From Kudoa neothunni (Eukaryota; Animalia; Cnidaria): a stretch of DNA of 64,000 nt. This document shows, in pieces, positions 33,201 to 63,249 of the stretch. The translations under genes and the position numbers were made by a program. The stretch is taken from positions 10,115,220-10,179,219 of the forward strand of contig OZ199840.1 in NCBI GenBank assembly GCA_964304625.1, read 5' to 3'. Within the stretch, counting starts at the first letter, position 1. Every line of letters starts with the position of its first letter. The notes beneath the pieces were generated by a model, which saw only the letters and a program-made list of their open reading frames with translations, was not told the DNA's origin and did no database searches.

Positions 33201-33756
33201 TCTTTTTCACAGTATAAACGCTTTTTAAATAGAGGTCTAATATACAATAATTTTAGAATAATAAAATTTATTTAAATACCTTTGGCTTTAAATACTCTCT
33301 TTACAGGGCATTTTTTTACTTCAGCTTCGCTCTTTCCTTGGCATCATCTTAAATATTTAATTTTCTTAAATGCATCATACTCCAATTTGATTTCGACTTT
33401 TCTGCAATCATAAAAGCAACTTTTTGAATCATTATAAACTTTAACTTCATCATTATTCATAACAGTGGTACAAGTTGGAATAGCCTTAAGTGACAATTCC
33501 TCTTTATCATATAATACTGCAGAGCACATTTTCTGTGGCTATTTTCAATGTTGTATCCAGAAAGTGAAAAAATAAATTTTTGGGTGTCGGATTCAAAATT
33601 CAGTTTTGTTTTGCTATTATCAATGTCGTGTGTAGAGGCGAAATTTCCTAGCAAAACTAACAAGAAATAATTGTAATAACATGTTTAAAAAATACGAGTA
33701 AAAAATAAGGTGCATATTGTGGATAAACACCTCACCCTTTCTGACATTACTATCAT
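27300..33756 (-). pseudogene. Paralogue A of the large Cys-rich FN3-like surface protein; disrupted, with no recognisable TM exons
   Basis: Colinear exon-by-exon homology to B/C (e.g. QNPEPSKLCYFGIKEINESHFSS, FSPGPYNDEMC). TGA at 33344-33346 where B/C have TGG. Frameshifts near 33510, 29820, 29450, 29365 and 28580. Boundaries are approximate. Confidence 0.75.
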
Positions 33757-40281: not shown

Positions 40282-40751
40282 TTAAATAGGTCTTTAGGTT
40301 CGGAGTTATTCCCCCTGTAGCAATAGACAATCTCCACATGCGGATTATACGGATCCGTAGCAATAGCCAGTACCAATTTTATTTGGTGAAACAGGTCTAA
40401 CTTTTAATGTTAAGATGACTCTAACATTAAATATAATAAATAAGATGAATATTTATCTTTAAATATTCAAGAACTTGGACTCCTTTCCAAGTTGAATACA
40501 ACTCGAAAACTCCATGTTATGTTAAGGTAATCCATTTTTTTAAGTCAATAAAAATATATAGCTTCTTGATTATTTGTGTCTGAAATAAAATAAAGAGATT
40601 AAATAAATTGGTATTAATGAAATTAATTAATACCCATTGATTAGAAACCTAATAGGATTTATTTTTCTTTTTTTAATGAAAACAATCGAGTATCACAGTA
40701 GTAATTGGTATAATTTTTCGTCTAACGACTCAAGTCATTGAGAAACACATT

Positions 40752-43700
40752 ATGCTATTGATATATGTTTTTATAAAATTTATCTTTATTATTAAAGGTA
40801 TTTTATTCTAAAAATGAATTTGTCATTTATTGTTTAGTGTTTCTCGATGAAAATGTTAAAAATAATATTGACAACAATATATTAAAGTTCATTTATTTAA
40901 ATAATGAAGAAAAATACAGAATTTCAATCACTGGATACAATATTGAAAACAGACATAGAAAATGTGCACTTCAGTATTATGAGAGAGAGCATTCAGCCCT
41001 AAAGGCAGTTACATCATGTACCAGCATTATACCAGGCTCATCTCTTGACCAAGCTTCAAATTTGTGTCTCTATGATTGTAAAAAGATCGATTTTAAGATG
41101 GATGGAATAGAAATCGATAAAATAAAGTTTGTAAGATGGTGCCAAGGAAAGAATGATACAGAGGTAAAAAAGTGTATTTACAAAAGAGTGTATCCACTAA
41201 GAGGTATCTGTGATTTTTAATGATTTTTATAAAAATATTTCCATAGATATTTATATAAAAACTGATATTAAAGCCAAAAAGGAAAATAATGAATTTAATA
41301 TATCCGTTAAAAGAAAAGTAAATGATAGCTTCGAGTCTATTGTTGACGGCACAATAAAAACTACTGTAAATAAAGATGATAGTAAATTTGTTAAGAAAAC
41401 TCTTAAACTAAGTTCATTATCATATGAAACTACATCTGTAGTCGAGTTTACCAACCGATCGCCCCAAATATTCCTGAATCCAAAAAAACCTAGTCAAGAT
41501 TGGTTTATCGCAACTGGATCGAAGACAGCTAAAAATGGAAAATTTTACACTATAAAACTTCAAAATCCGGAACCATCTAAAATTTGTTACTTTGGAATAA
41601 AAGAAATAAATGAGTCTCATTTTTCATCTCACTGTTCAGATATGAAAAAAGCTGGGCCGTGTTTCCAACCTTGTTACAAGGCTACTCTCTATCATGATTC
41701 AGATTTGAAATTTGCACAAGTCATTGTGGTGTCTCAAGTAAACCAACCCCCAAAAGAGTTTATACAGCTCGTGACATGTAATATTTATATGAAAAATTAA
41801 ATTTAACATTAAATTAGTTGGCACAACTCAGCCTAATATAAGAATTGATACTAATAATCAAGCCACTATTGATTTATCTAATTTAAACAAGAATGAGGAC
41901 GCTACTAGCGTAGAAAGTCAATCTGAAATGACTGAAATGCAAATTGTAGAAAAATATCTTGGAGTTGAGGCTGATGGCGTAAATCCAACGTGTACAACAC
42001 AAGGTAGATGCAAGAATTTTGACTCAGTCATATTTACAGAACTTAAGCCGTTAACAGAATATGTTTTAAAACTGAAAATAACCAAACTCACCACCTTAGA
42101 TTCTCCTGAAGTAGAACATTATCACAGATATATCTATTTCAAAACCGAAGGTATTTATATATAGAAATTTTCTTCTAAATTTAAAATAGGAGCTAAATTT
42201 TCTAATAATAATCAACTTTCTCCATCACCTATTACATCCGAACATACAATATTAACTCTAGCTCCTGCTACTTTTATCTCGAGTGAAGTTAATTCAGGCT
42301 CAAAATGCGAACTATACTACTCCGTATTAGGGGAACAATCGCCAAAATATCCTGCTACCTGTGACAAAAATGGAAATAAAATATTCTGCTTTGATACTTG
42401 TACTAACACTTTCAATATTATTAACCTCGATCCAAAAACAACATATAAAATAACCCTATGCACAAAGGGATATACATGTGTTGAAAGTGAACAAGCAGCA
42501 AGTAATACCATGTCTAAAAATGTATATATTTATATCTATTTATTAACAGCGGGTGGTACGACACTCACTATTACTCCAGGAAATGATTCTGAACCGAAAG
42601 ACGACATTTACCATGACCAAATCATCAGGAGACATATTCGGGAATTCTTGGGCTTATTTTATTGTTGAAACAATGTCGAAAAAAATAGTTATTGATTGTT
42701 TGGATGGCGCTTGTCAAAACAATGTAGCCACAACTGGAGGAAATACGTTAGAAATTCAATGGACTAAACTTAACATTGGTGTCCCTTATAAAGTTGTTGT
42801 GATAAATCAAAATTATACTAAACCTGCCACGGCAGATATAACAAGTTATTATTATAAGCGAGACTTCAACTTATTTTTTTTTAGTAATCGAAGAAGAAGC
42901 TAGCGATGGCATGATTCTAACACGCGACGCAACAAATAATGGGTACAATGTTAAATTTAAAGGTGAACTGGCCGGTGTAACCGATAAAGATTGTACAGTG
43001 AAAAGATCTAACTTAGATTTAACTGGTTATGAGAGTGCTGATAGAAGTAATGAAGAATTAAAAAAATCCTGCAACGATCTTGGTACTGAATCCGCTATTA
43101 GGCATAATCCTCAGAATAAATTAAATTATATATCTGTCACTTATGAGGTTATCGAAACTACAGTCAATACTCGTTCAGTCGAGACTTCTTCAGTCATTAA
43201 AGCTGAGGAAACGAGTCAGGATGTGAAGAATGCGGAGAAATTGGATGGTCAGGAGAACACATCGAATTTACATTTATCATCGCCTCTTAAGATTACCAAA
43301 TCGTATTATAAAGGGAAGGTCTTTTCATATTATATAGGTAAAACAATATAAAAATATATTCATAACTGTATCTTTTTTTTAGATTATTACGAGGAAATTA
43401 ACTACGTAGCAAAGATAGATGGAGACAAAATAAAACTGGGAACAAGCAAATCTACACAATCATGTAAATTTCATGCGGACTCACAAGAGCAAAACGGTGG
43501 CTCTGTAACTACAACCGAAGATGGCTCCACTCATACATATAAACACTACTCTTTACAGTTTGGTGAACTTGTCGGCGATTATCACATAGATTGTCCTGAA
43601 TATTTTGATTTTCATTATTTTTATGACAATACATTTGTGAAAACCCACGCACCTGTTTTCAGTAGATTCTACTATGAGCTAGCTTTTAGCGAGGAGAATA

Positions 43701-46700
43701 AAAGACTTACTGTTAAATTAACTAACGAGAATCCTTCTGAAATATGCACATTTGAATGGATAGATGCAACATTCTCAAAATCTAATCGATTTTTTTCGAA
43801 TAATTGTGATAACGGAGCTAACTGTTTTTATAGCCTCTGCAGTGAAATCACTTTTGGAAATATACCAGAAAGCGTAAAAGCAGTAAAAATTCGTGTCCTT
43901 AAATATGGAATGATTCCTATCATTGGTTACCAAAACAACATTTATTTACGTGATAATATAAATAGTTTCGTTTAATAAGTTCGTTTAGTTAATCATGGGA
44001 GCGATACTTCTGCGGAAACTAACGGTCAAAATATCAAAATTAACATTAGTGCTAACAATAAGAATGAAGATGGTCAACCAGTCACAAGTCCAACTGCAGC
44101 CGCATGTTCATTGAAGATTTGGAATACTTATGCTCCATTAATTAGCGAAAATGGAAGGACAGATGTGTCTTCCCCCTCTTGCGAGTTCTCCGAGATGGAA
44201 ATTCCACCCGCACCAGCTGATTTACCTAATGATATCATGGTAACCATAACAAACATACCTCATTATAAACCAAGAAAATATTTCTATCATAAAATAAGTA
44301 TTCTTTATAATAATTGATTCTTTACTATATTTTTCTAAGCTCAATCAAATAATTTTTCGCCTCAAGCAATCTCGTTGTCGGCCATTGCAGATGGATTCAC
44401 TTTCACTCTTAGTTCTACATCAGTATCAAACACATGCACTATTTACGTGAAAGAAAAAGATTCTAAGAACGGTTTTCATCCAGCTATATGTTCAGATAAT
44501 AATTTGTGCGTAAATACGTGCGGCTCTTCTTTCACTATCAAGGGCCTTTATTCTGGTGTCACGTATAGTATCAAAATAGTGCCGAGTGGAAATTATAACA
44601 TTAAAGTTATAACTGAGAAACGAACAAGTAAAAAATATAAATTAACATGTAATAAATAATATAATATATAGCTGGTGACAGCATTACATTTAAAGTTTCA
44701 GATGAAACAAAGAAAAACCTACTTGTTATAACTCATAATGACGTTATTACTGGTGTTAATGATAAAAATTGCCATTATCAATTATACAGACACGAAGGAA
44801 ATAACAGTAATTACATTTATTTTATTACGATCATAATATTATTTAGCTTCGCTGACTGAAATAGTGCAGTCGTGTATTGGATGCGTTAGCGATAATTCAA
44901 ATAATAAAAAATGCAATAATATTAGTTTCACTAACAATTTATATAACAAAAAATTTAATTATCGGTTGCTAATTTATGTAGAGGGGAAATCAAAGCCATT
45001 TAAGATTGATATTCCCGGTAAAATTAATTAATTTTATTTTTCGGGTAAATATTTTTGTAGCATTTACCCGAGGTGGGAAATTTCAACAAGGATTCATCAC
45101 AAAAGAAAAGAGTGAACAGGATAAATTCTCTATATCACTTTCCCAATTTTCAACGGACACCAAATGTGTCGTAAAATTATCAAAATTTGATTACTCTGAT
45201 TTTGCAGACCCAGAATGCAACTCAGAAGGTAACGAATTTTGCTTGATGGAGTGTAATTCTAATAATGCTGAGATTGGATATATCAACTCAAAAATTGATC
45301 GATACGTAGTGGTTTGTTACGGCCCAAGTGATGAAGAAGCAAAAAAATGTAAAAAAAGAAATGTTTTCTCAATTAAAATGGGTAATTAATAATCATATTT
45401 ATTAATTTCTATTACAAAATTGTTTATAATTCAATAACTAATTTATTTTAAAATAATGATTTTATTTAATAGATTACAAACATAAACAAATATATTCTTT
45501 GGGCCATACGGATGGCAAAATTAAATTTTCTTATAAATCTAACTCAGTGACAAATTGGGAAATCCAAGTCGATGGTATTAATGATGAATTCAACAAATCT
45601 CAAAAAGATGGGTTAAATCTATCAAGTTACTCAGATACCATAACGACAAATTCTGCTTCGTTGCCAATAGATAGATTCATGAGTTATTACAATATTGATT
45701 CTACAGATATGTGGCCAAGAATAATCTATTACACTAATAATACATACTTGAATGAAACTATTGCCTTGAAATCCGATATTATATTTTCCATTAGTGGAGT
45801 TGATGGAAACCACAAACAACTTCATATAAGTTTCTCACCAGGCCCATACAATGATGAAATGTGTCATATCAAAGTGTTTCAAGTCAACAATGAAGGTGCA
45901 GACAAAGTAGAGGTTATTTTGAATAAATGTGAAAACGTTGAAGATGGTTGTTATCAACTTTGTCAAGATGGCATTATTAATTTGACGGAAGAATCTGAAA
46001 AAGTTGGTGTAACCGTCACGAGAAGATTTGATAACAAAAAATTCAAACAATACTACATAAGTAAACGAATTTTTCAACCTTATCACTAACATTTTATAGG
46101 AGGTGACAGTGGTTTTACTTTAACTGAGATAACCAGCTCAGGAGTAAAACTTAATGGACTTGAATCCTACAAAACTCTACACTCTGGCACTAATGTTCCA
46201 GCGTGTACAATAAATATATATAAAGCCAGTGTCATTCCCGCAGAAACCAGGGCTCATTGTTCAAACTCAAACTGTAATACTGATTGCGAAGTTTCTTATT
46301 CCATTGTTTCTTTGGAGGCTGGTTCGAGTTACGTGATTTCAGTAGAAATTACCAACCTTGGTTTCACGGAAAAATACATCAAGAAAGCAATATTTAGAAC
46401 AAGTAGATCTTATTTAATATTCTCAACATCTAAATCAGTTTAGACGATGGGACCGATCTAAATATTAGCAATGAAAGTGCAAAAATTCAAAATAGAACGG
46501 CTACAGTCACACCATTTCAATCTGAACACTCCTTACCAATTTGTAGAGTCTATCTTGAGAAACAAGGCGGAGCTGATAAAAAATATATGGCCACTTGTGA
46601 GGGATTGGGAACTTGTGAAAACAAATGCGACAGTGAGTTTTATATAATTAACCTAGAATTAGGAAAGACCTACAATATGACTGTGGAACCATCTGATGGG

Positions 46701-47628
46701 AAGAAGGTTAAAACCTATAATATTACCACGGGTATGACAAATTCAGCAGTTAAATAAATATAGCGGAATTTAGTTAGTGGGGAAACATCGGTTAGTTATA
46801 ATTATAAAGACGGCACTGAATTGAAAATTCGTGTGGATTTTGATGGGAGGAACTCCAAGAGTAAATGTCCATTCATACTAAAAGAGAAAACATCTGCTGG
46901 TCAAATATTATCAACAAACACTTGGTGTAATGATGACGAGGAGTGTTCAGCCAACGGATGTGACATCGAAATTAATAAGTTGTCGAAAAATAAAGATTAT
47001 GTACTTTCAGTAAAAGTGAAGGATTATTCTAATTATGAAAATTATGCAATTTTATGTAAATTAAATATTTCTTATATTGAAATATTTAATATTTATTTAC
47101 AAAAAAAGATTCAAAACCTCCAAAATCAACAGGGTAATTACTATAATTATATTTGTTATGATTATATTTTTATTAGTAATTAATAAAAAAACAAAATTAC
47201 TCAATGATTAATAGAAGAACAACAAATAAGAAGTGAACATGAGAACGTCGATATAGATGATATTTTTCAAAAAGTTATCAAAATGGTTGAAACAGGGTGG
47301 ATAAAAAATAATTTTGTCAAATTTTTATAAAATTTATGTTTAGTAAAAAATTTATGATATAATTATAAGATTATCCGATCTTGATTAGATAGTAAGCAGA
47401 AACAAGAACATGCAGCTGCGAAGAATATCAACTCGTAGCTTTTAGTCCAATTATTTAAATCTAACTTTTAAATAGATCTCTCGTCCCATACCTGTAAATA
47501 CAAGCGTGAATTATTTATATAATTGTTTTAGCATTTATGGTCTGATACCAATTGTGGCTTCAATTTTTGTGGTTGTCGGCATTGCGGTTTACTCAAGGCG
47601 TCCCAAAGATGTTGCCTACGATTTATAA
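40752..47628 (+). CDS. Paralogue B: ~1,950-aa type-I membrane protein with signal peptide, Cys-rich FN3-like repeats, TM helix and short tail
   Basis: Leader MLLIYVFIKFIFIIK. About 22 exons, almost all joined by phase-1 introns. FN3-like 'L.P.T.Y.(I/L).(V/I)' motifs (ELKPLTEYVLKL, NLDPKTTYKITL, GLYSGVTYSIKI, NLELGKTYNMTV). TM LIYGLIPIVASIFVVVGIAVY, tail SRRPKDVAYDL*. One apparent frameshift at ~42600. Confidence 0.75.
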
Positions 47629-47632
47629 AATA

Positions 47633-48696
47633 CAGTCGATATCGGATATTGTGTAATTCCAAAATTTCAACGTTTTTCTTTTTAGAGAGAAACTTAATTT
47701 TATGTTATTGTTATTATTTTATCATTATGTAAACCTGGCTAACATTAAAAATAAAATAAATATTTCATTTATGTATAATCTCGGTATTGCGTGGAAACTT
47801 TTTATTGCGTGGCTTTTGTGGCCGATCTATTTAATAATAAGAATGTTTTCTTCATTATGTCCCGTTAAAACGTAGTATATCAGATAAAAGAGAAATTGTT
47901 GGTTATTATAATTCAAAAAATGACAATTTTTAAGTTTAAATTGAATATTGTGATGATCTATGTTGAATATTAATATAAGATCATTTAAAAATTGACAGAA
48001 TTCTTTCACGCAAAGATAAATTCGAAAATGGGGATATTGAAACTAAAAGGTAGAGACATTTTTCAGGCAGATTCAGAAATATAAATGTTGAGTTGTATGA
48101 TTGGTTTGTTAAGCAACGAGTGAATGATGTTCTGCCGAGAAATGCCATTACAGAAATTGATTTATACATAACAAATAAAAAAGAAATATCCAATTCTAAG
48201 TTTAGTTAGGGATGGCAAAGGGTCCACGTCAAGATATGGGCAGCCTTCAAAATGTTTCATGGTGAGGCTGCGAATGCAGATATTTCTTCTGTTGACTCAT
48301 GGATTGTTGAAACCATTAATTTGGTTAAGGCATATAGTCTTGAAGACGTTATAAACATTGATGAAACTACAATTTTTTCTGAGAAGCTACAAAAAATTTG
48401 TTATGTTTTAAAGGATGAAGCCGGAATATAAGGGAAAAAGCATCCAAAAAAAGGAGTGACTGTTTTACGGTCATTCTTCTTTAAATATGGATAAGCTTCC
48501 ATTAGTTTTTACTAGTAGATTTCCAAATCCTAGACGTTTTAAATGAGTTAACATCTATCGCGTGAATAAAATTAAAAAAAAATATAGTTGATTTGTGTTA
48601 TATTTATAGGCATAACGATAAAGTTGAACCAAAAATAATAGATGATAACAGAAAAGGTTTACATTTGTTGTATCAACATCCTCTTCATCCCAAGAA
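47633..48696 (+). mobile_element. Tigger/pogo remnant starting 4 nt after the gene B stop
   Basis: TA|CAGTCGATATCGGATA terminus. ELYDWFVKQR, FHGEAANAD and YSLEDVINIDETTIF motifs. Confidence 0.8.
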
Positions 48697-48710
48697 AACA
48701 CTTTTTATTG

Positions 48711-48800
48711 CAGCGCTTCTCAACTAAAACTGAACTTGCACCCCCTGAGACCAAAGTTCGCACCTCTGAAGGTGTAAGAATTCCCAGTTGGGAACCCATA
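48711..48800. mobile_element. Short hAT-like MITE at the inner palindrome junction
   Basis: CAGCGCTTCTCAACT ... CAGTTGGGAACCCA termini. Confidence 0.45.
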
Positions 48801-49494
48801 CCGTAGAGGGTTTTTCACTGACTGCACAATTTCATTTTTACTAGTTTATTATCTCCAACAAATTCACTTTCCGATATTTGAAAAAAAGATCTAACTCGCC
48901 ATCTGACGATAGTATTTCTTCCCTTGAGTTACTACAGCCGTTCATTTTATTTGTTTAAAAAATAACACGTGAGATATTTCAAATTTAAACAAAACAATCG
49001 TATTGATACTTAAGCAACCAGACTCGAAGGATAAGTCAACAAAGTTAAAAATTTAATTAATTATATATTGGTTTAATTATTTAGGAGAAACAAGTTGGGT
49101 TTAAACCGATTATCCTACAACTAACAAACGTAAACACAGACACGATCGCGATTGATTTCACTGAAACTTCACCGAAGCTATACGACGTAGATTAAATGGT
49201 GGAATGATTTCCATTTTTCTCGAAATTTGTACCATATAATTTTATAAAAAATTCCAATTTAACTCATAACAATGTTTATAATTAATTTATGAAAAAAATC
49301 TGGGGTCATTTTAATCCCAAAATTCGTTGGAGGATTCATCTTTTTTGGAGGGAATTACTCATATAATCATTTAAAAATTTTAATATATGAAACGAGAGAG
49401 AAATTTAGGAGAGTAACTGGAGTTCTAAATTTATTGATAGTGTGCGGAAGATTTTATAGACGGATTAAACGAATTTAGGGTTAGAGGGTTAAAA

Positions 49495-50222
49495 CAGTGG
49501 TGAGCAAAGTGTGGCCCTCGAAGAAATTTTTTGTGGCGAGCGGACGGGTTTATGAGGCTGAAAAATTGCGCGAGCATGTACATTTTTTAAAATCTAGAAA
49601 CATCAAGGCACCATTTGCCTTCCATAAACAAATAAATAAACAACCTTTTGATGAATATTATGGATTTGTAAACTTTAATTTTACGCGATTTTATTATATG
49701 ATTTGATGTTTTTTCTATGATTATCATATGTAAATGTGAATGAAGTAAGATCTAGTACGCCCTTAAACAAAATCACGTCATAAACTTCAGAGAAAAATGG
49801 TACACGAGATTCAATTAACAACAGAAAGAATCTAAAAATAACTAAATGGCAGAAAAACATATGACCATGCGATACTCATACATAAATTAAGTTTGACGCA
49901 ATAAGAATCATATCCATATTTTCCATTACATTCGCAGAGTTAAAAAAATCTGATTTATTAACATATTTGAAAAGCGATAAAATCTATTATTCCGATCGAA
50001 ACTTGAAATAGTATGCCGATCACCAAATTTCTATTTTTTAAAAATTATTTAGTTCCTTTTTAAATTAATTTATACACTAACTTTTTTATTGTACCGAAAA
50101 TGTTAGAAAAACTACCAATAGGTATTTAAGTTCTCAGAGAACATTTAATCAATAATGCGGCCCTCCAAGTTTTTGTAATGGGCCAATGTGGCCCGCAGAA
50201 CCAAAAGTTGCGTCCATCACTG
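49495..50222. mobile_element. Non-autonomous hAT element
   Basis: CAGTGGTGAGCAAAGTGTGGCCC ... GTTGCGTCCATCACTG, with 8-bp target duplication GGTTAAAA / GGTTAAAG. Inserted at a piggyBac-like end (AGAGGGTTAA). Confidence 0.8.
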
Positions 50223-50707
50223 GGTTAAAGGGTTAAAATGTTAAATGTGATTTCAACTTCTTATGTTCAATGTTTATGTATATAAAGATGAGCTATCCCT
50301 TTTATAAAAAAGAATCTACTTTATTTTATCAGCTGAAAATATAATAGCAGAACTGAGGAGTAAAAACTGAATTATTGAATAAATTTCTTGTTGAAAAATT
50401 AATCAAATTTAAACAATCGCACGTGCAATTCCATTTAACTCCAAACATGTTCAGAAAATTTTAATTCTAATTCCATCATCCCATAATTATAATAATAGAA
50501 AGATAATTTTTTTTTATGAATTATCCGAAAAGCTGTACTTTTATATAATGTTCACCTTAAGAGTTGTTATAGCCCAAAAATCAACTATACACACACTAAA
50601 ATTAAGCATGGCGCCAACTAAACAAACTTGTTCTATATAACGATTTTACTCTATTAATGTGAACGTATAAATAGGAAACAAGTTTTGAGTAAAAAAATAA
50701 ATTGGTT

Positions 50708-52346
50708 TTAATCACTATTATCATTATTGTTATTATCAATGCTAATAACATCATCAATACAAAATTTCGCTCTACATGTCGGACACCGACTAGTTCCTGT
50801 TGCCCATTCACTTTCAGGTCTTTGTTGTTGATGATCGATAAACAAACGACCGAGACATTTTACACACATGACAGGATTACAGCGACATTCTTCGCACAGA
50901 TCATTTCCACATTGTTTCACGAGTTTGGCGTTGGCTCTATTCGAGATGCAGATAATACAGTATTTTGGTTCCTAAATATATTTAAGTTACATATAATTTA
51001 TGACATGTTTAAAATATAAAATTTAGAATTATTTACGACACCTCATTAGAAACAAATCAACAAATTAACGTCAGTTTATTATTTTATGCAGGTGTTGGGT
51101 AAAAAATTATTTTGTCAAAAAAAAATTAACAACAGAAATATAAGAAAAAAAATTATATACAGCTTTATATTTTATGTCTACCGCCTAAATGCGCACACAA
51201 ATATAGAGGGCTCCCTTAATTTCGGCACTTACCGCTGGCCTAACTGTGGTTTGGTCTGTGGAATTAACTGACGTTTTATTGCGTTCATTGTAGATTTTTG
51301 TGTTAATACTGATAATATCACTAAAGTAATTGAGAAACTGTTGGTCGATCGGCAGTAGGATAGACACCGAAGTATCGACCAGCACAGATTTCCCAATTTT
51401 AATCTCAATGTCGTTCAAACAATGTACAGGCGCACTGAAACTGAAATAATAATTGTCGATATCATGAGATGCCATGAGCAGTAACGACTGATCAATGGCG
51501 CTTCGATCTAAGGCCACTTTAAAGTTGAGTATCTACGACGATATGGGACAACATAAAAAAAATTAAAAACACAATATTGGCAACCTGGAATGCCGAGTTG
51601 CTCGCATTGACATTCACCAAATTAAATGTATTCATGTTGAGCGTTCCGTATTGAGAGGTGAAATGACGATGGTTGAACGTCGATTGGATCGAAACAACAC
51701 CCCAATTGATAGGTATCACGTAGATGTTGTAGGTGTCGGTTTTTATGAGGAAATTTTCGGTGATAACAACACTATTAAAGTTGTGTAAACCAGGAAATAT
51801 CAGATTTTCCGATCTCCTTTCCAGTTCGTCATTGATCTAATTATTTTCAATGAGTTGCTCAGAGTGTACAGCAGACAATCGTTGCTTACAAGTTTTAATG
51901 TATTAGATGTGGTAGGAGATGAGTCAGAATAATGATAGTTGGCCAACAGAAAGTCCAGTATAGTGCTGGCATAGAAATTGTTGTAAACTTTAAATACGCT
52001 CCAAACAGAAACTGCGATCCCACCTGGAAATAAAACTTTCACCATCTCAAACAAACCACGTCCACCAAACACATAAATCATCACAAAATAAGCTACGAAT
52101 TTATTGATAGAGAATGGAATCTACTACAGAAATTATACCCGTGAACAGGTTGTAATGTAGTAATGTGTTTAGAGCGCATCGTCTCTTGTGAAACTGAATA
52201 AAATCGGGCTCATTACGAAACAATGGCGCCAATAACATTTGAATTGAAAGACCCACATTGTCCACTGCCTTCGGTGGAAACACACAATAGAAAACAAACA
52301 CAATATAACAAAAAGTATAATAAATTAAAGTTGAAAATTCGTTCAT
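50708..52346 (-). CDS. TMEM129: E3 ubiquitin ligase TM129 (ERAD), ~5 exons
   Basis: N-terminal TM segment YIVFVFYCVFPPKAVDNVGLSIQMLL..FIQFHKRRCALN. C-terminal C4C4 RING CIICISNRANAKLVKQC..CEECRCNPVMCVKCLGRLF..CPTCRAKFCIDDV. Confidence 0.9.
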
Positions 52347-52490
52347 TGAACACACACTCTATTATAATTGGACCCGGCAATGACACCACACCACCAATAG
52401 AGATCCAACGATAAATCCCTGACCAATTTAATCAAACGATCGCTTATAATCGTGAGATTTATATATATATAAAACTCTATTGAGTTCCAA

Positions 52491-52853
52491 TCAACAAACT
52501 GATAGACTATTAATTTGGCTAATTCTATTGCGCAGCTTTTCAATCTTATTTCTACAAAATATGATGGCCTCATCTAGTGACATCTCAAGAAAAAATCCAT
52601 ATCCAATAGAGACCATCACCTTTGATGGATTATTCAGATGGGATTTTTGAAATATTCCAAGTCCAATATTGTTAATCATTTCAAATGGTGGTGTGGTGGT
52701 GGATGAGCATTTGATTTTCTCCATCCGAACACTCAACGTTTCCAATAATTCTATCCAGTTGTAGCATTCCATCTCAAACTGTTGAATTTTTTTTGATGTA
52801 ATTAATGAATATGTGGCATCATTAGATGCCGGAGGGTCGTGGCTGTTAGGCAT
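52491..52853 (-). CDS. UXT: Prefoldin alpha-type subunit, UXT-like (3' end probably spliced)
   Basis: NIGLGIFQKSHLNNPSKVMVSIGYGFFLEMSLDEAIIFC matches the UXT/prefoldin-alpha hairpin motif. Confidence 0.7.
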   Translation of the reverse strand: MPNSHDPPASNDATYSLITSKKIQQFEMECYNWIELLETLSVRMEKIKCSSTTTPPFEMINNIGLGIFQKSHLNNPSKVMVSIGYGFFLEMSLDEAIIFCRNKIEKLRNRISQINSLSVC

Positions 52854-53647
52854 TACTTAAAGAATTTGTATGCGCGATTTGAATAAGGTCACATTATACT
52901 AACACGCTTGCGCACCAATCTGGATGTGAATAACGATTTTCTTATGCTTAAGTTCGATGATTGTTCGTACAAGAAAACTTTGTTATATAACAGCTAAAAT
53001 TAAGTTTAACTGAGGAAGAATTATTAAAACTTGTCAAAAAACTTTTCAATTGATATTTTTTAAATTCTCTCCGTTATGGGAAGTGAATCAAACAATCGAG
53101 ATAGAGCTAGTTGAATGAAGGCCTTCATTTTAACATTCATGATATTTTTTATTTATTGGTTTGATAACATCAAATTATCCATTTGTGGACAATAAGTTCA
53201 CATGATTTTGACCCTCACATTTTGCCTCATATCATCGTCAAAAATATTTTCGCCATCTTCGATCTAATTTAAAAAAATTAATTTGATATACATAAAATTT
53301 TATTCTGAGACTATTTCTAATGTGGAGTATCTTTCTTATTTCTGCTTGGTTCATAAACTGCTTATAAGTTTATAATTGCAGTTTTTTACTACTGTCAAAT
53401 ATTTTTAATTATCAATACAATTAGTAATAATTTCTGGCGTAATACTCCCTCAAAATTTAGTTAATGTCAAGATTGAGTTTAGTAAGGTATATTTCTCGAT
53501 CGTAGAATCTTCACATAAAAACGTGTGCTTGGTCAGTGTACTCCTATACCTACTTTTAGTGAATTTAATGAGGCCTAAATTATGCGTTGTAGAATATTAG
53601 TTGTATTTTAGGGAGGAAAAAATCAGATATTTTAAAAAAAATCAATA

Positions 53648-54710
53648 TTCTTAGGATGAAGAGGATGTTGATACAACAAATGTAAACCTTTTCTGTTATC
53701 ATCTATTATTTTTGGTTCAACTTTATCGTTATGCCTATAAATATAACACAAATCAACTATATTTTTTTTTAATTTTATTCACGCGATAGATGTTAACTCA
53801 TTTAAAACGTCTAGGATTTGGAAATCTACTAGTAAAAACTGATGGGAGTTTATCCATATTTAAAGAAGAATGACCGTAAAACAGTCATTCCTTGTTTGGA
53901 TGCTTTTTCCTTTATATTCCGACTTCATCCTTTAAAACATAACAAATTTTTTGTAACTTCTCAGAAAAAATTGCAGTTTCATCAATGTTTATAACGTCTT
54001 CAAGACTATATGCCTTAACCAAATTAATGGTTTCAACAATCCATGAGTCAACAGAAGAAATATCTGCATTCGCAGCCTCACCATGAAACATTTTGAAGGC
54101 TGCCCATATCTTGACGTGGACCCTTTGCCATCCCTAACTAAACTTAGAATTGGATATTTCTTTTTTATTTGTTATGTATAAATCAATTTCTGTAATGGCA
54201 TTTCTCGGCAGAACATCATTCACTCGTTGCTTAACAAACCAATCATACAACTCAACATTTATATTTCTGAATCTGCCTGAAAAATGTCTCTACCTTTTAG
54301 TTTCAATATCCCCATTTTCGAATTTATCTTCGCGTGAAAGAATTCTGTCAATTTTTAAATGATCTTATATTAATATTCAACATAGATCATCACAATATTC
54401 AATTTAAACTTAAAAATTGTCATTTTTTGAATTATAATAACCAACAATTTCTCTTTTATCTGATATACTACGTTTTAACGGGACATAATGAAGAAAACAT
54501 TCTTATTATTAAATAGATCGGCCACAAAAGCCACGCAATAAAAAGTTTCCACGCAATACCGAGATTATACATAAATGAAATATTTATTTTATTTTTAATG
54601 TTAGCCAGGTTTACATAATGATAAAATAATAACAATAACATAAAATTAAGTTTCTCTCTAAAAAGAAAAACGTTGAAATTTTGGAATTACACAATATCCG
54701 ATATCGACTG
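53648..54710 (-). mobile_element. Duplicated copy of the Tigger remnant at 47633-48696
   Basis: Near-identical reverse complement. Confidence 0.85.
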
Positions 54711-54714
54711 TATT

Positions 54715-57700
54715 TTATAAATCGTAGGCAACATCTTTGGGACGCCTTGAGTAAACCGCAATGCCGACAACCACAAAAATTGAAGCCACAATTGGTATCA
54801 GACCATAAATGCTAAAACAATTATATAAATAATTCACGCTTGTATTTACAGGTATGGGACGAGAGATCTATTTAAAAGTTAGATTTAAATAATTGGACTA
54901 AAAGCTACGAGTTGATATTCTTCGCAGCTGCATGTTCTTGTTTCTGCTTACTATCTAATCAAGATCGGATAATCTTATAATTATATCATAAATTTTTTAC
55001 TAAACATAAATTTTATAAAAATTTGACAAAATTATTTTTTATCCACCCTGTTTCAACCATTTTGATAACTTTTTGAAAAATATCATCTATATCGACGTTC
55101 TCATGTTCACTTCTTATTTGTTGTTCTTCTATTAATCATTGAGTAATTTTGTTTTTTTATTAATTACTAATAAAAATATAATCATAACAAAAATAATTAT
55201 AGTAATTACCCTGTTGATTTTGGAGGTTTTGAATCTTTTTTTGTAAATAAATATTAAATATTTCAATATAAGAAATATTTAATTTACATAAAATTGCATA
55301 ATTTTCATAATTAGAATAATCCTTCACTTTTACTGAAAGTACATAATCTTTATTCTTCGACAACTTATTAATTTCGATGTCACATCCGTTGGCTGAACAC
55401 TCCTCGTCATCATTACACCAAGTGTTTGTTGATAATATTTGACCAGCAGATGTTTTCTCTTTTAGTATGAATGGACATTTACTCTTGGAGTTCCTCTCAT
55501 CAAAATCCACACGAATTTTCAATTCAGTGCCGTCTTTATAATTATAACTAACCGATGTTTCCCCACTAACTAAATTCCGCTATATTTATTTAACTGCTGA
55601 ATTTGTCATACCCGTGGTAATATTATAGGTTTTAACCTTCTTCCCATCAGATGGTTCCACAGTCATATTGTAGGTCTTTCCTAATTCTAGGTTAATTATA
55701 TAAAACTCACTGTGGCATTTGTTTTCACAAGTTCCCAATCCCTCACAAGTGGCCATATATTTTTTATCAGCTCCGCCTTGTTTCTCAAGATAGACTCTAC
55801 AAATTGGTAAGGAGTGTTCAGATTGAAATGGTGTGACTGTAGCCGTTCTATTTTGAATTTTTGCACTTTCATTGCTAATATTTAGATCGGTCCCATCGTC
55901 TAAACTGATTTAGATGTTGAGAATATTAAATAAGATCTACTTGTTCTAAATATTGCTTTCTTGATGTATTTTTCCGTGAAACCAAGGTTGGTAATTTCTA
56001 CTGAAATCACGTAACTCGAACCAGCCTCCAAAGAAACAATGGAATAAGAAACTTCGCAATCAGTATTACAGTTTGAGTTTGAACAATGAGCCCTGGTTTC
56101 TGCGGGAATGACACTGTCTTTATATATATTTATTGTACACGCTGGAACATTAGTGCCAGAGTGTAGAGTTTTGTAGGATTCAAGTCCATTAAGTTTTACT
56201 CCTGAGCTGGTTATCTCAGTTAAAGTAAAACCACTGTCACCTCCTATAAAATGTTAGTGATAAGGTTGAAAAATTCGTTTACTTATGTAGTATTGTTTGA
56301 ATTTTTTGTTATCAAATCTTCTCGTGACGGTTACACCAACTTTTTCAGATTCTTCCGTCAAATTAATAATGCCATCTTGACAAAGTTGATAACAACCATC
56401 TTCAACGTTTTCACATTTATTCAAAATAACCTCTACTTTGTCTGCACCTTCATTGTTGACTTGAAACACTTTGATATGACACATTTCATCATTGTATGGG
56501 CCTGGTGAGAAACTTATATGAAGTTGTTTGTGGTTTCCATCAACTCCACTAATGGAAAATATAATATCGGATTTCAAGGCAATAGTTTCATTCAAGTATG
56601 TATTATTAGTGTAATAGATTATTCTTGGCCACATATCTGTAGAATCAATATTGTAATAACTCATGAATCTATCTATTGGCAACGAAGCAGAATTTGTCGT
56701 TATGGTATCTGAGTAACTTGATAGATTTAACCCATCTTTTTGAGATTTGTTGAATTCATCATTAATACCATCGACTTGGATTTCCCAATTTGTCACTGAG
56801 TTAGATTTATAAGAAAATTTAATTTTGCCATCCGTATGGCCCAAAGAATATATTTGTTTATGTTTGTAATCTATTAAATAAAATCATTATTTTAAAATAA
56901 ATTAGTTATTGAATTATAAACAATTTTGTAATAGAAATTAATAAATATGATTATTAATTACCCCATTTTAATTGAGAAAACATTTCTTTTTTTACATTTT
57001 TTTGCTTCTTCATCACTTGGGCCGTAACAAACCACTACGTATCGATCAATTTTTGAGTTGATATATCCAATCTCAGCATTATTAGAATTACACTCCATCA
57101 AGCAAAATTCGTTACCTTCTGAGTTGCATGATGGTTTTACGAACGCAGTGTTATCAAATTTTGATAATTTTACTGCACATTTAATGTCAGTTGAAAATTG
57201 GGAAAGTGATATAGAGAATTTATCCTGTTCACTCTTTTCTTTTGTGACGAATCCTTGTTGAAATTTCCCACCTCGGGTAAATGCTACAAAAATATTTACC
57301 CGAAAAATAAAATTAATAAATTTTACCGGGAATATCAATCTTAAATGGCTTTGATTTCCCCTCTACATAAATTAGCAACCGATAATTAAATTTTTTGTTG
57401 TATAAATTGTTAGTGAAACTAATATTATTGCATTTTTTGTTTTTTGAATCAGTGTTTTCACATTCAATACACGACTCCACTATTTTAGTCGGCGAAGCTA
57501 AATAATATTATTATCGTAATATAATATATCGAACTACTGTTATTTCCTCCGTGCTTATATAATTGATAATGGCAATTTGAATTACTAGCGTCAGAGATAT
57601 TTCCAATAGGATCTATAACAAGTAGGTTTTTCTTTGTTTCATCTGAGACTTTAAATGTAACGCTGTCACCAGCTATATATTATTTATTATATATTAATTA

Positions 57701-60700
57701 ATATTTTATACTTATTTTTTGGTTTTCAATAATTTTAACATTATAATTTTCCACTCGGCACTATTTTGATACTATACATGACATCAGAATAAAGACCCTT
57801 GATAGTGAAAGAAGAGCCGCACGTATTTACGCACAAATTATTATCTGAACATATAGCTGGATGAAAACCGTTCTTAGAATCTTTTTCTTTCACGTAAATA
57901 GTGCATAGCTCGATACCACTGCGGAGTTAGGAGTGAATGTGAATCCATCTGTACTTGGAGTCAACGAGATCTCTTGAGATGAAATATCAGTTAATTGAGC
58001 TACGTAAAATATAGTAAAGCAGCAATTATAATAAAGAATACTTATTTTATGATAGAAATATTTTCTTGGTTTGTAATGAGGTATGTTTGTTATGGTTACC
58101 ATGATATCGTTGGACAAAACAGATGCTACCGGTGTTATTTCCATCTCGGAGAACCGCAAGAGGGGGGAGAGACATCTGTCCTTCCATTTTCACTAATTAA
58201 TGGAGCATAAGTATTCCATATCTTCAATGAGCATGTGACCGATTGACCATCTTCATTCTTATTGTTAGCACTAATGCTAATTTTGATATTTTGACCGGAA
58301 GTTACCGCAGAAGTATCATTTCCATGTTTAACTAAATGAACTTATTATTTTAAAATAATTATATTGTTACGTAAATAAATGTTGTTTTGGTAACCAATGA
58401 CAGGTATCATTCCATGTTTAAGGACACGTACTTTTACTGCTTTCACCCTTTCTGGTACATCCCCGAAAGTGATTTCACTACAGAGACTATAAAAGCAGTT
58501 AGCTCTGTTTGCACAACTGTTCGAAAAAAATTGATTTGAGGCTGAGAATGTTGCGTCTATCCATTCAAAAGCACATATTTCAGAAGGATTCTCATTAGTT
58601 AATTTAACAGTAAGCCTTTTATTCTCCTCGCTAACACCCAGCTCATAGTAAAATCTACTGAAAACAGGTGCGTGGGTTTTCACAAATGTATTGTCATAAA
58701 AATAATGGAAATCAAAATAATTATGACAATCTATGTGATAATCCTGTGTAAGTTCACCAAACTTTAGGGAGTAATGTTTATATGTAGGAGTGGAGCCATC
58801 TTCGGTTATAGTTTCAGAGTCACCGTTTTGCTCTTGTGAATCCGCATGAAATTTACATGATTGTGTAGATTTGCTCGTTCCCAGTTTTATTTTGTCTCCA
58901 TCTATCTTTGCTACGTAGCTAATTTCCTCGTAATTATCTTGAAAAAATTACACTTATCAATATTTATTTTTATTTTTTACCTATATAGTATGAAAAAACC
59001 CTCCCTTTCTTGTACGTTTTAGTAGATTGAGTTCGCGCTGATGCATCTGGAACAGGTTTGGCTTCTCGTCCACCCTCACCCATTTCTTCAGATTTTCTGA
59101 TTGGAGGAGTATTGATTGTTTCAATAAGCTCATAAGTGAATGAAATATAATTTAATCTATACTGAGAAATAGGCGTAATATCAAATTCAGTACCAAGTTC
59201 GCTGCAGAGTTTTTTTTGGTTTCCACTACTTCCATCAACAACCTCATAACCGGTTAAGGCAGTATTGGATCTTTGCACAGTGCACTCTGTATTAGATACG
59301 CCGGTTGGTTCACCTTTAAATTTAACGGAGTACCCACCAGTTTGTGCATTGTATCTTAGAATCATACCATCGTCGGCTTTTTCTTCTTGTTCGTTTACTA
59401 AAAATGTTAAGTTAAAATCTAGCTTATAATTATTACTCGTTATTTCTCTCTCAACTGGTTTAGCTTTATCTTGATTTATCAATACGATTTTATAAGTAAC
59501 ACCAGTATTAAGTTCAACCCACTGAATATCTAATGTTTTATCCCCATGTGTGGCCACATTATTTTGACAAGCGCCATCCAAACAATCAATAATCATTTTA
59601 TTGGATGTTTTTTCGACAATAAAATAAGCCCATGAATTTCCTAAAGTTTCGCCTGTCTCCACAGTCATAGTAAACTTAACCGTCTTTTCTGCTTCTTTAT
59701 TTTCTGAAGAGGCAGTGAGTGTTACTCCAGTAGCTATTAGGGAGGTAAATAGAAAATTTTAGATGTGGTATTACTTGTTGCTTGTTCACTTTCAACACAT
59801 GTATATCCCTTGGTGCACAAGGTTATTTTTATATGTTGTTTTTGGGTCAAGGTTAATAATATTGAAAGGACCAGTACAAGTATCATAGCAAAAGGTTTTA
59901 CTTCCATTTTTGTCGCATGTAGCAGGATATTTTGAAGATGCATCCTCCGCTACCGAGTAGTAAAGTTCGCATTTTTCCACTGAATTAATTCCATTTTCGA
60001 AAAGATTGGATGAAGTTAAGGTTAATTTTGTATGTTCGTTTGTATCAGCTTCTGGATTAAGTTGTTTATTATTAGCAAATTGAATTCCTATTTTACAGTT
60101 AAAAGACAATTATTTTATATGAATACCTTCGGTTTTGAAATAAATATATCTATGATAATGTTCTAATTCAGGAGAATCTATGGTGGTGAGTTTGGTTATT
60201 TTCAGTTTCAAAATATATTCTGTTAATGGTTTAAGTCCTGTAATTGTGATTGAGTTAAAACTCTTACATTCATTTCCTGTTGTACAAGTTGGATTTACGC
60301 CATCAGCTTCAATTCCAAGATATTTTTCTACAATTTTCATTTCAGTCATTTCAGATTGACTTACGTCGGCAGCGCCCTCATTTTTATTCAAATTGGATAA
60401 ATTAATAGTGGCTTGATTCTTATTATCAATGGTTACACTGGGTTGAGTTTTGCCAACTAATCTAATGTTAAATTTAATTTTTCATATAAATATTACATGT
60501 CACAAGCTGTATAAATTCTTTTGTGGTTTGGTTTACTTGAGACACGACAATGACTTGAGCAAACTTCAAATCTGAATCATGGCGGAGAGTAGCTTTGTAG
60601 CAAGGTTGGAAACATGGTCCAGCTTTGCTCATGTCTGAACAACGAGATGAAAAATGAGATTCATTTATTTCTTTTATTCCAAAGTAACAAATTTTGGATG

Positions 60701-61522
60701 GTTCCGGATTTTGAAGTTGTAAAGTGTAAAATTTTCCATCTTGAGTATCCTTTGATCCAGTTGCGATAAACCAATCTTGACTAGGTTTATTCGGATTCAG
60801 AATTATTTGAGGAGATCGGTTGTTAAACTCAATTACAGATGTAGTTTCATATGGTAATGAACTTAGTTTAAGAGCCTTCTCAACAAATTTATTATCATGT
60901 TGATTTTCAGTAGTTTCGGTTGTGCCATCAACAATAAAATTGAAGCCATCATTTACTTTTGTTTTAACGGATATATTAAATTCATTATTTTCCTTTTTGG
61001 CTTTAATATCGGTTTTTATATAAATATCTATATAAATATTTTTATAAGAATCATTAAAAATCACAGATACCTCTTAGTGAGAATACTCTTTTGTTAATAC
61101 ACTTTTTTACTTCTGTATCATCCTTTCCTTGGCACCATCTTACAAACATTATTTTCTCTATTTCTGTCCTATCTATTTTAAAGTCGAGCTCTTTACAATC
61201 ATAGAGACATAAATTTGAAGCTTCATCCTTAGTTGAGCTTGTTGTGACGATGCTACATGTTGTAAATGCCCTTAGGACTGATTCCTGCCTATGATAGTAC
61301 TGAAGTGCACATTTTCTATGACTATTTTCAATATTGTATCCAGTGATGGAAATTTTGTATTTTTCTTCATTATTTAAATAAATTAACTTTAATATATTGT
61401 TGTCAATATTATTTTTAACATTTTCATCGAGAGACGCTAAACAATAAATAACAAATTAATTTTTAGCATAAAATACCTTTAAAAATAAAGATAAATTTTA
61501 TAAAAACATATGTCAGTAGCAT
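54715..61522 (-). CDS. Paralogue C of the large FN3-like surface protein (frameshifted as assembled; possibly a pseudogene)
   Basis: Same exon structure as B and leader MLLTYVFIKFIFIFK. Single-base indels versus B near 59826, 58156, 57907 and 56961. Confidence 0.7.
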
Positions 61523-63249
61523 AATATGTTTCTGAATGGTTTGAGTCGTTAGACGAAAAATTATACCAATTTACTACTGTGATACTCGATTGTTTTCATT
61601 AAAAAAAAGAAAAATAAATCCTATTAGGTATCTAATCAATGGGTATTAATTAATTTCATCAAATAAAATTGCTACTAGAAGGAATAACTCCGAATCTAAG
61701 AATCCAGTTAAAATTTGAAATTCATATTTTTAATTAATGATTTTTGCTTTCAAAACCTAAATACCTTAACTTGAGGTTAATGGCAAATTTTTCTTATTAT
61801 TTAATAGAGTTAGATAAAAAAAAGAAGTTTATATGTATATGTACCAGATATACATATTTAATCCAATTAGGGTTGATATCCATAAGGGAAAAATTTTGAC
61901 CAAGGAATGTCCACGAATGCTGAAAATAACCCTTTAGATCACCGTTTTCCCACATGGGGTTCAGGAGTCGTTCTATAATACATTTAAAAATTAATCTTAA
62001 TTTATTCATTTCTTAATTTTTGATAGTTTCCGTTTAAATCATGTAAGAACGTAATGCGTGTAATAATATCTTTTGTTGTTTAGTTTATTTGATTCTATGA
62101 AATGGCGCAGCAAAATAATAGTTAATATTAAGTCTATTCAACCTCCAAAGTCTATCACTCGCTATTTTCATGTAAAATCGCAGCTTTGTTATCTTTTAAA
62201 GTAACATATTTATATGCTGAGGCTGTAATTAGGTTGTCATCATTTTTTTCTATTTAGAAATAATCTATGTCCTCAAAAATAAAACTACGATATAGTTTAA
62301 ACTGTATATTATCCATTATATTACTTTTTAAGTTTCACGCTCAAATTTGTACCTGGCCTCTGGTATGAATTTTAGCTAAATTTTCTTTATAAACGTTGGT
62401 ACAACGAAAATCAGAGCATTCATTTATACATTTAAATAAATGAATGCTAATTTTAATAAAATAATTAGTTATTTTTATTCAGGTACATTATAAAGGCATC
62501 TGTTTTGAATTTCCTGAATGATTAAATTAAAATCTAACTCGATATGGAATATGGAATTCGTTGGGTTTTTCCGCACAAGATGGTATATGAGGCAGGTTCC
62601 TCGACTTTATTGTGTATAAATTAAAAGTATCGGAATTCCTTGAACCCCCAAACGATTTAAAAGTACCATTTCCAAACAGTGTTCCACGCTTTGAATTCCT
62701 TATCAAAAATCGGCGAGAGCGAGAAGGCTGCCAGATTAATTAAACACCAAATAACATTTTTTTGAAAAGGGGAGTTTTTTGTGAACTATATGGATTGATT
62801 ATAATTATTTGGCCTATTTAAATTGCTCCTTTAAGTACAGAACTTAATCAAGCGACTGTAATTTTTATTAATATAACCTAGTATTATTTTTATATAAATT
62901 TTTTGTTTTTAATATTTCAAAATAATTATAATAACATTTTTAAGTTGGGATTGTTTATTGCTCTACATAAAAATGGTATGTTCAAGCAGGAATAAATAAT
63001 AGCTTCAATCGTTGAGTGTTAAGTCATGGGGCTGGAAAAGATATTTTTTCTATTGATGCCTTTAAAAAAATCGTAAAATTAGGAAGTTAAAATATCATTT
63101 AAATAATAGATCAAATTAAACCTTGACTTTGACATGGTGGAGGGGACGCGAGTGTAAAATTTGTAGGGAAACACTGCTCTATGGCATATGCAATACAAAG
63201 AGTTAAAAATATTTCAGATTGCTTTCTTATATTCATTACAAATGGATTG

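What the first reader, a model, noticed from the sequence alone, without database searches (positions are those of the whole stretch)
47133..47388. Two consecutive nested twin introns ([D1,2] stwintrons) gate the transmembrane exons of gene B
Seen: both upstream exons end ACAG followed by G-GT. Site 1: G47133, inner intron 47134-47176 (43 nt, GTAATT..TAG), then TAATT..TAG 47177-47214. Site 2: G47296, inner intron 47297-47343 (47 nt, GTGGAT..TAG), then TAAAAA..TAG 47344-47388. Removing each inner intron joins G+T into a new donor (GTAATT, GTAAAA) of a 39- or 46-nt outer intron. All four introns are of the modal size in this window. Two-step splicing gives phase-1 junctions, like every upstream intron of the gene, and one open frame: ..YSKPPKST/EEQQIRSEHENVDIDDIFQKVIKMVET/DSKQKQEHAAAKNINSSLVPYLIYGLIPIVASIFVVVGIAVYSRRPKDVAYDL*. 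The one-step GT-AG alternatives I tried at site 1 all hit a stop before the TM. Established: this GGT..AGT..AG layout defines [D1,2] stwintrons, described in fungi. Inference: I know of no tandem case in an animal-type gene, so this lineage may use ordered nested splicing.
Basis: partly seen in the sequence, partly recalled or inferred. Interest (0 to 1): 0.9.

Follow-up and report, generated by a model that had tools for sequence, protein, structure and literature searches.

The report
Nested twin introns in fish parasite
A family of about 60 surface-protein genes in a fish parasite (almost certainly the myxozoan Kudoa neothunni, an animal) carries two back-to-back introns that each sit inside another intron's start signal and so must be cut out in two ordered steps, a layout so far described only in fungi; it is kept in a distantly related species too, but no RNA was available to prove the splicing.

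Summary
Both G|GT..YAG|TA..YAG units are invariant in 23 inspected paralogues (53-99% identical) while intron interiors drift. A strict tandem pattern finds 46 family copies genome-wide, against 2 hits with the exon one base shorter. A collinear homologue from another, unidentified species (L041, 23-47% protein identity) has both units at the same positions, the same 24- and 81-nt exons, and halves matching its own shorter introns (36-39 nt). Only two-step removal keeps the frame to the transmembrane helix using the conserved acceptors. An Illumina contig confirms GGG at site 1. The genome matches Kudoa neothunni; the protein is an FN3-like-repeat type I membrane protein. Best reading: two genuine [D1,2] stwintrons, the first I can find in an animal (0.85). 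Limits: no RNA (three runs gave zero reads). No excess appears outside this family, so it is not shown to be a lineage-wide splicing mode. A membrane/secreted 'gate' is unsupported. First-stage readers noted the same layout in other copies in this genome.

The parts
40838..47055 (+). Ectodomain exons of gene B: tandem, mostly one-exon, phase-1 domains of about 95-110 aa, at least the last FN3-like; whole model about 1,975 aa, 5' end uncertain
   Evidence: model; 7-strand sandwich, pLDDT 86; best Foldseek matches FNIII and monobodies, TM about 0.5-0.56, E 1e-3; profile hits carry fn3
47056..47108 (+). Ordinary phase-1 intron (53 nt)
47109..47132 (+). Exon A, 24 nt in 23/23 copies and in L041
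47133..47133 (+). G1 of the split outer donor, site 1
   Evidence: G in 23/23 copies while the base before varies G19/A3/C1; read-level support
47134..47176 (+). Inner intron, site 1 (43 nt; 41-50 in paralogues; 39 in L041)
47177..47214 (+). Remainder of outer intron, site 1 (39 nt with G1; donor GTAATT formed after step 1)
47215..47295 (+). Exon B, 81 nt (27 codons, phase 1-1); 78 in a few copies; 81 in L041
47296..47296 (+). G1 of the split outer donor, site 2
   Evidence: G in 23/23 and in L041
47297..47343 (+). Inner intron, site 2 (47 nt; 38-48 in paralogues; 37 in L041)
47344..47388 (+). Remainder of outer intron, site 2 (46 nt with G1; donor GTAAAA formed after step 1)
47389..47493 (+). 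Stalk exons C (47389-47434) and D (47476-47493) with an ordinary 41-nt intron
47532..47628 (+). Last exon: transmembrane helix (19-residue mean hydropathy 2.6) and short tail ending Y-D/E-L
54955..55210 (-). Same tandem pair in the near-identical inverted copy of gene B

Best explanation
Two consecutive [D1,2] spliceosomal twin introns flank an 81-nt stalk exon of a large FN3-like-repeat type I membrane protein family in Kudoa (Myxozoa, Cnidaria). Proposed mechanism (inferred, not observed in RNA): the spliceosome, pairing short GTA..AG units of about 40 nt, first removes the inner intron. That ligates the preceding G to TA.., creating the GT donor of the outer intron, which is removed in a second round and takes the G with it. 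The net junction looks like a GG-AG intron and keeps phase 1. Order is obligatory in this copy: outer-first destroys the inner acceptor, and inner-only or single-step removal leaves one extra G and a stop within 1-7 codons. The pair predates the split from the L041 species and was multiplied with the gene family. It is most likely an old, tolerated gene-structure accident (two intron insertions between G and T of existing donors, or one unit duplicated with its exon) rather than a designed switch.
For: Shown: signals invariant in 23/23 copies at both sites while interiors average 65-74% majority and vary in length like ordinary introns. Exon lengths 24 and 81/78 only when G1 is intronic; 21/23 copies open through the TM and 23/23 stopped by one-step use of the same acceptor. 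In the 4 copies that lost an outer AG, the next AG lies 3 or 9 nt on, which keeps this frame. 41 family hits with an 81-nt exon and 5 with 78, against 2 hits with 80. Second species L041: collinear exons at E down to 4e-28, same two units, CAG instead of TAG at one inner acceptor, halves 39/36/37/37 nt against its own median intron of 36, while K. neothunni halves are 38-52 against a median of 41. The only copy seen with G1 changed to A is a truncated pseudogene. An ordinary 91-nt intron of the same gene has no central AGT and varies about 45-110 nt between copies. Known: layout and mis-splicing match the fungal definition (PMC12403724); Kudoa splice signals are reduced to GTa..AG with weak +6 T (PMC13644364).
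Against: No RNA: three raw metatranscriptome runs gave zero reads on the stretch, so neither the mature junction nor the intermediate was seen. Branch points were not identifiable. In-frame one-step routes to distal AGs exist. Paralogues are not independent samples. The species of L041 and the identity of the genome rest on inference.
Confidence: 0.85

Rival explanations
1. Each unit is one non-canonical GG-AG intron (82 and 93 nt) removed in a single step, giving the same mRNA; the inner GT and central AGTA are incidental.
For: Gives the same protein. GG-AG use is reported once in human (CPSF3, PMC4176328). Ordinary introns of 91 nt exist in this gene.
Against: Does not explain invariance of the central YAG-TA in 23/23 copies and in L041 with unalignable interiors, nor that both halves track each species' intron size. 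A canonical GT sits one base away. No GG-AG among about 60,000 fly introns (PMC4528330).
Confidence: 0.05
2. Ordinary one-step GT-AG introns that use a more distal AG (47134-47230 or 47233; 47297-47392), with the G exonic (Gly or Arg codon).
For: These routes are canonical and in frame in this copy; +16 or +19 AGs at site 1 occur in nearly all copies.
Against: The 16 nt that would become intronic behave as coding in the two-step frame (conservation by codon position 0.77/0.89/0.62, 23% G against 8-10% in introns). The distal AGs are simply Ser/Arg codons. At site 2 the +4 AG is missing in 9 of 23 copies and no in-frame AG lies within 40 nt in 6. L041 has none at the same place. Two conserved YAGs per unit would be left without a role.
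Confidence: 0.05
3. The nested units are a selected regulatory switch: incomplete or one-step splicing makes a secreted ectodomain (or skips exon B in frame) and complete splicing the membrane form. This is an add-on to the best explanation, not an alternative structure.
For: Both units lie in the juxtamembrane stalk. All failure products stop before the TM. Skipping exon B from the rebuilt site-1 donor is in frame. A fungal stwintron takes part in exon skipping (PMC6616335).
Against: Stops fall 1-49 codons on with no conserved tail. UPF1 is present, so nonsense-mediated decay is likely (inference). Neighbouring ordinary introns are equally retained, so persistence needs no special function.
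Confidence: 0.2
4. Assembly artefact or pseudogene: the extra G is a homopolymer error, or the 3' ends are dead.
For: Single-G indels in G runs do occur in some copies (L009 exon B; the inverted copy at its 91-nt intron).
Against: Illumina contig identical at site 1; 46 copies; second species from another run; coding-type conservation. An error would still leave the central YAG-TA unexplained.
Confidence: 0.01

Closest known systems
[D1,2] stwintrons of ascomycete fungi (Hypoxylaceae, Aspergillus lipS, Helminthosporium aox; PMC12403724, PMC9024468, PMC5639578)
   Same: Inner GT-AG intron between G1 and U2 of the outer donor; short introns; one-step mis-splicing leaves a G and shifts the frame; position conserved between species with unrelated interiors; phase 1; some copies have a G after the unit and allow the equivalent [A2,3] route (L006, L007, L022, L026).
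   Different: Animal host; two units on consecutive introns around one symmetric exon; spread by duplication of a whole gene family rather than as mobile sister stwintrons in unrelated genes; no recognisable branch-point consensus; no conserved terminal stem (fold z -1.8 and -2.0 here, -0.3 and +0.7 in L041); no RNA proof yet.
Recursive splicing / zero-length exons and intrasplicing in flies and vertebrates (from general knowledge; reviews listed)
   Same: A first splicing step creates or exposes the donor for a second step.
   Different: Recursive sites are AG|GT with a complete donor inside very long introns. Here the junction is AG|T, the G comes from upstream of the inner intron, and each piece is about 40 nt.
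U2/U12 twintrons (Drosophila prospero; vertebrate cases, PMC3564746 abstract)
   Same: One intron inside another in an animal gene.
   Different: Those are alternative, mutually exclusive events using two spliceosomes; no splice signal is interrupted and no order is forced.
FN3-repeat type I membrane proteins (Dscam, receptor-type FN3 arrays)
   Same: Phase-1 one-exon beta-sandwich repeats, one TM helix, short tail.
   Different: No Pfam hit for the exons; lineage-specific family of about 60-66 copies with no named homologue.

Membership tests
[D1,2] stwintron | Internal intron lies between G1 and U2 of the external donor (G|GT..AG|T..AG) | tested here: met
   both sites, 23 copies and L041
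[D1,2] stwintron | Both constituents have canonical donor and acceptor and normal intron size and composition | tested here: met
   GT(A/G), YAG, 82-86% AT, 38-52 nt against ordinary median 41; L041 36-39 against 36
[D1,2] stwintron | A branch-point element in each constituent | tested here: inconclusive
   No invariant branch motif in these or in the ordinary introns; myxozoan branch sites are weak (PMC13644364)
[D1,2] stwintron | Removal of the whole unit including G1 restores the frame; one-step removal to the same acceptor shifts it | tested here: met
   (in silico)
[D1,2] stwintron | Position and phase conserved in homologues | tested here: met
[D1,2] stwintron | Mature exon-exon junction seen in RNA | not testable with these tools
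   zero reads in three RNA runs; no RNA holder indexed
[D1,2] stwintron | Splicing intermediate lacking only the internal intron | not testable with these tools
   as above
Mobile 'sister' stwintrons / introner-like elements | Sequence-similar copies in unrelated genes, with terminal inverted repeats | tested here: not met
   copies confined to homologous positions of one family; the four halves are not similar to each other (z at most 2.1); no conserved stem
Recursive splice site | AG|GT with intact downstream donor in a long intron | tested here: not met
   junction is AG|TA and the units are 74-94 nt
Fibronectin type III repeat proteins | Seven-strand beta sandwich / fn3 profile match | tested here: inconclusive
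   fold consistent (best E 1.3e-3), no Pfam hit

The most novel reading that the evidence does not exclude
The first animal stwintrons, ancient within myxozoans, are kept in tandem because they act as a splicing checkpoint that sets the ratio of membrane-anchored, secreted and short-stalk forms of a 60-member parasite surface-protein family.
Probability: 0.2. Interest if true: 0.85.

Novelty: new variant of a known kind. Interest (0 to 1): 0.7.

Why it matters
All seven primary stwintron papers in the searched library concern ascomycete fungi, and none of the myxozoan genome or intron papers read mentions them. A conserved case in a cnidarian shows that an animal spliceosome can build a donor by splicing, probably an independent origin favoured by tiny, size-defined introns with minimal signals. 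Two units on adjacent introns, kept across roughly 30% protein identity and in dozens of paralogues with natural mutations, give a ready test set for intron definition, splicing order and intron gain. Practically, gene predictors and aligners that require GT-AG will truncate or mis-model the membrane anchor of one of the parasite's large surface-protein families.

Tried and rejected
RNA test: runs X5-X7 laid on 46901-52900 gave zero reads even over the prefoldin gene, so the parasite is not detectably in them; no test. Ten non-family pattern hits fetched earlier gave no convincing stwintron: repeats, ordinary introns followed by a stop, or non-coding. Protein searches were done exon by exon by reference; the joined spliced model was used only inside scripts and never sent to a search. 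They found one true homologue (P0007/L041) and no transcript-derived protein that spans the junctions. A search with a conserved exon to confirm the taxon returned nothing at E 1e-30. The run accession of L041 is in no paper of the library. Tandem duplication of inner from outer intron: no similarity. Conserved hairpin: not seen. The 91-nt intron at 45382 is not a third stwintron. A micro-exon between the halves is excluded because the second half of site 1 has no GT or GC.

Full report
Observation. Removing each unit together with its first G gives an open frame through exons of 24, 81, 46 and 18 nt into a hydrophobic last exon. A short-read contig from an independent run of the same sample is identical over 47005-47238, so GGG at site 1 is not a long-read error. 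Site 2 was not among the pieces shown, but no indel was listed there.

Organism and gene. The genome is 40.26 Mb in 4 contigs, the largest 17.2 Mb, with about 30% GC in this window. This matches the Kudoa neothunni assembly recovered from yellowfin tuna data: 40.2 Mb, three chromosomes, N50 12.0 Mb, GC 30.4%, QV 48.5, almost no parasite RNA (PMC12239612). The DNA holders are about 800-Mb contig sets, host-fish sized. The identification is an inference, not a marker-gene result. Gene B models as about 1,975 aa with nearly all introns phase 1 and 39-45 nt. The last large exon folds as a seven-strand sandwich whose best structural matches are FNIII domains, at borderline E-values, and its profile picks up fn3 proteins weakly. 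Two exon profiles find about 60 and 66 copies in the genome.

Paralogues. In 23 copies of 53-99% identity (median 59%), G1, GT, the central YAG and the following TA are present at both sites in every copy. The interiors are no better conserved than the ordinary introns beside them and vary in length. Exon A is 24 nt in all copies and exon B 81 or 78 nt in all but one. 21 of 23 read through the TM under two-step removal, the exceptions carrying 1-nt indels. One-step removal to the same acceptor stops in all 23. Four copies have lost an outer AG; in each the next AG is 3 or 9 nt away, which preserves exactly this frame. Genome-wide, a strict pattern spanning both units gives 45 hits with an 81-nt exon (41 in the family), 6 with 78 nt (5 in the family), and 2 each with 80 or 75 nt. 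The one copy where G1 is an A is the truncated, stop-containing copy at about 27.4 kb. As an internal control, an ordinary 91-nt intron upstream in the same gene has no central AGT and ranges from about 45 to 110 nt among copies.

Second species. A profile of one exon found a single full-length homologue among 1.8 billion proteins (P0007), on a 3.1-kb Logan contig from another run (L041). It is collinear with gene B exon by exon (E 1e-14, 2e-10, 3e-15, 4e-28, 4e-9; 23-47% identity). At its 3' end it has a 24-nt exon, G, a 39-nt GT..CAG, TA.. 35 nt to CAG, an 81-nt exon, G, a 37-nt GT..TAG, TA.. 36 nt to CAG, then two short exons and a TM exon. Only two-step removal reaches the TM in frame. Exons A and B share just 11/24 and 22/81 bases with K. 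neothunni and the intron interiors do not align, yet the signals remain. The four halves (36-39 nt) match that species' own shorter introns (median 36 against 41). Shuffling gives such a central motif in 1.4% and 2.2% of cases. This is the strongest evidence that the midpoint is a working acceptor plus half a donor. The species is unidentified; another myxozoan is my inference.

Mechanism. Shown: the signals, their conservation and the frame logic. Inferred: inner intron first, G+T ligated into a new donor (GTAATT, GTAAAA), outer intron second, as demonstrated by intermediates in fungi (PMC12403724). Kudoa signals are reduced to GTa and AG with a weak +6 T (PMC13644364), and the rebuilt site-1 donor has that T in 13 of 16 copies. 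With such weak signals, pairing by distance would favour two 40-nt steps over one 82-93-nt step (inference). The pre-mRNA also holds a GTA at the midpoint that borrows the acceptor's G; using it first would destroy the inner acceptor, except in the few copies whose next exon starts with G, where the fungal [A2,3] alternative gives the same mRNA (PMC5639578).

Rivals. A single GG-AG step gives the same protein but leaves the invariant midpoint unexplained. They are Ser/Arg codons, would discard 16 nt with coding-type conservation at site 1, and are absent from many copies at site 2. Neither can be formally excluded without RNA, and the three RNA runs held no parasite reads.

Scope. A strict single-site pattern gives 35 hits preceded by G and 139 preceded by A, C or T. 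Twenty of the 35 coincide with family exons. The remaining 15 of 154 (10%) is below the genomic G content, so there is no detectable excess outside the family. This pattern catches only about a sixth of family sites, so scattered cases are not excluded. One further tandem candidate (C3:2222979-2223229) lies outside both family profiles and could not be fetched. In the 64-kb window the only qualifying units are these two and their inverted copies.

Function. All failure products end before the TM, and skipping exon B is in frame, so a membrane/secreted or stalk-length switch is possible. But the stop positions are not conserved, UPF1 is present, and ordinary introns are kept equally well. I rate a regulatory role at about 0.2.

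Novelty. The library's stwintron papers are all fungal, and the 2026 survey of myxozoan introns, as far as read (parts 1-2 of 3, up to the references), does not mention nesting. Subscription literature is not covered, so 'first in an animal' is provisional. The mechanism is a known kind; the kingdom, the tandem arrangement and the depth of conservation are new. Earlier first-stage notes of this scan report the same layout in other copies in this genome; they are not independent evidence. Searches were made exon by exon; the joined model was left out of all searches.

Noticed in passing
window 40614-48696 / 53648-61662: An 8-kb inverted duplication (90.5% overall, over 99% at the 3' end, more diverged in the distal domains) holds two copies of gene B, suggesting gene conversion near the TM end. 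The minus copy has an extra G at the donor of its 91-nt intron (about 56,960): a frameshift or a homopolymer error.
   Followed up: partly
window about 27,300-33,600 (minus): Third, truncated family copy: in-frame TGA in the last domain exon, 1-nt insertion in exon A, G1 changed to A at 27363, nothing beyond site 1.
   Followed up: partly
window 47600-47628 and paralogues: Cytoplasmic tail ends Y-(D/E)-L-stop in most copies and D-E-I-stop in L041; possibly a PDZ-binding or sorting motif (from memory, untested).
   Followed up: no
G000:C3:2222979-2223229 (minus): A tandem G|GT..TAG|TA pair with about 78-nt spacing that neither family profile hits; a far paralogue or another gene.
   Followed up: partly
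L021 (G000:C1:91282-91369, minus): A degenerate-looking relative with an exon-B-like stretch, a GGT..TAG|TA..TAG unit and a TM-like exon, but the frame fits a one-step phase-0 intron.
   Followed up: partly
window 1-1200, 9500-10700, 12400-13600: Three tandem copies of a gene whose translation looks like multi-Kunitz protease-inhibitor domains (by eye, not scanned).
   Followed up: no
window 22016-22480 and 52491-52853 (minus): Glycoside hydrolase 47 (mannosidase/EDEM-like) exon and a prefoldin subunit (Pfam).
   Followed up: partly
G000:C1:14852608-14853095 (minus): UPF1 zinc-binding domain present, so the NMD core is at least partly retained in this reduced genome.
   Followed up: partly
L031, L034, L040; L032, L033: Two dispersed repeat families carry a GGT..TAGTAA..TAG motif by chance in non-coding context.
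   Followed up: partly
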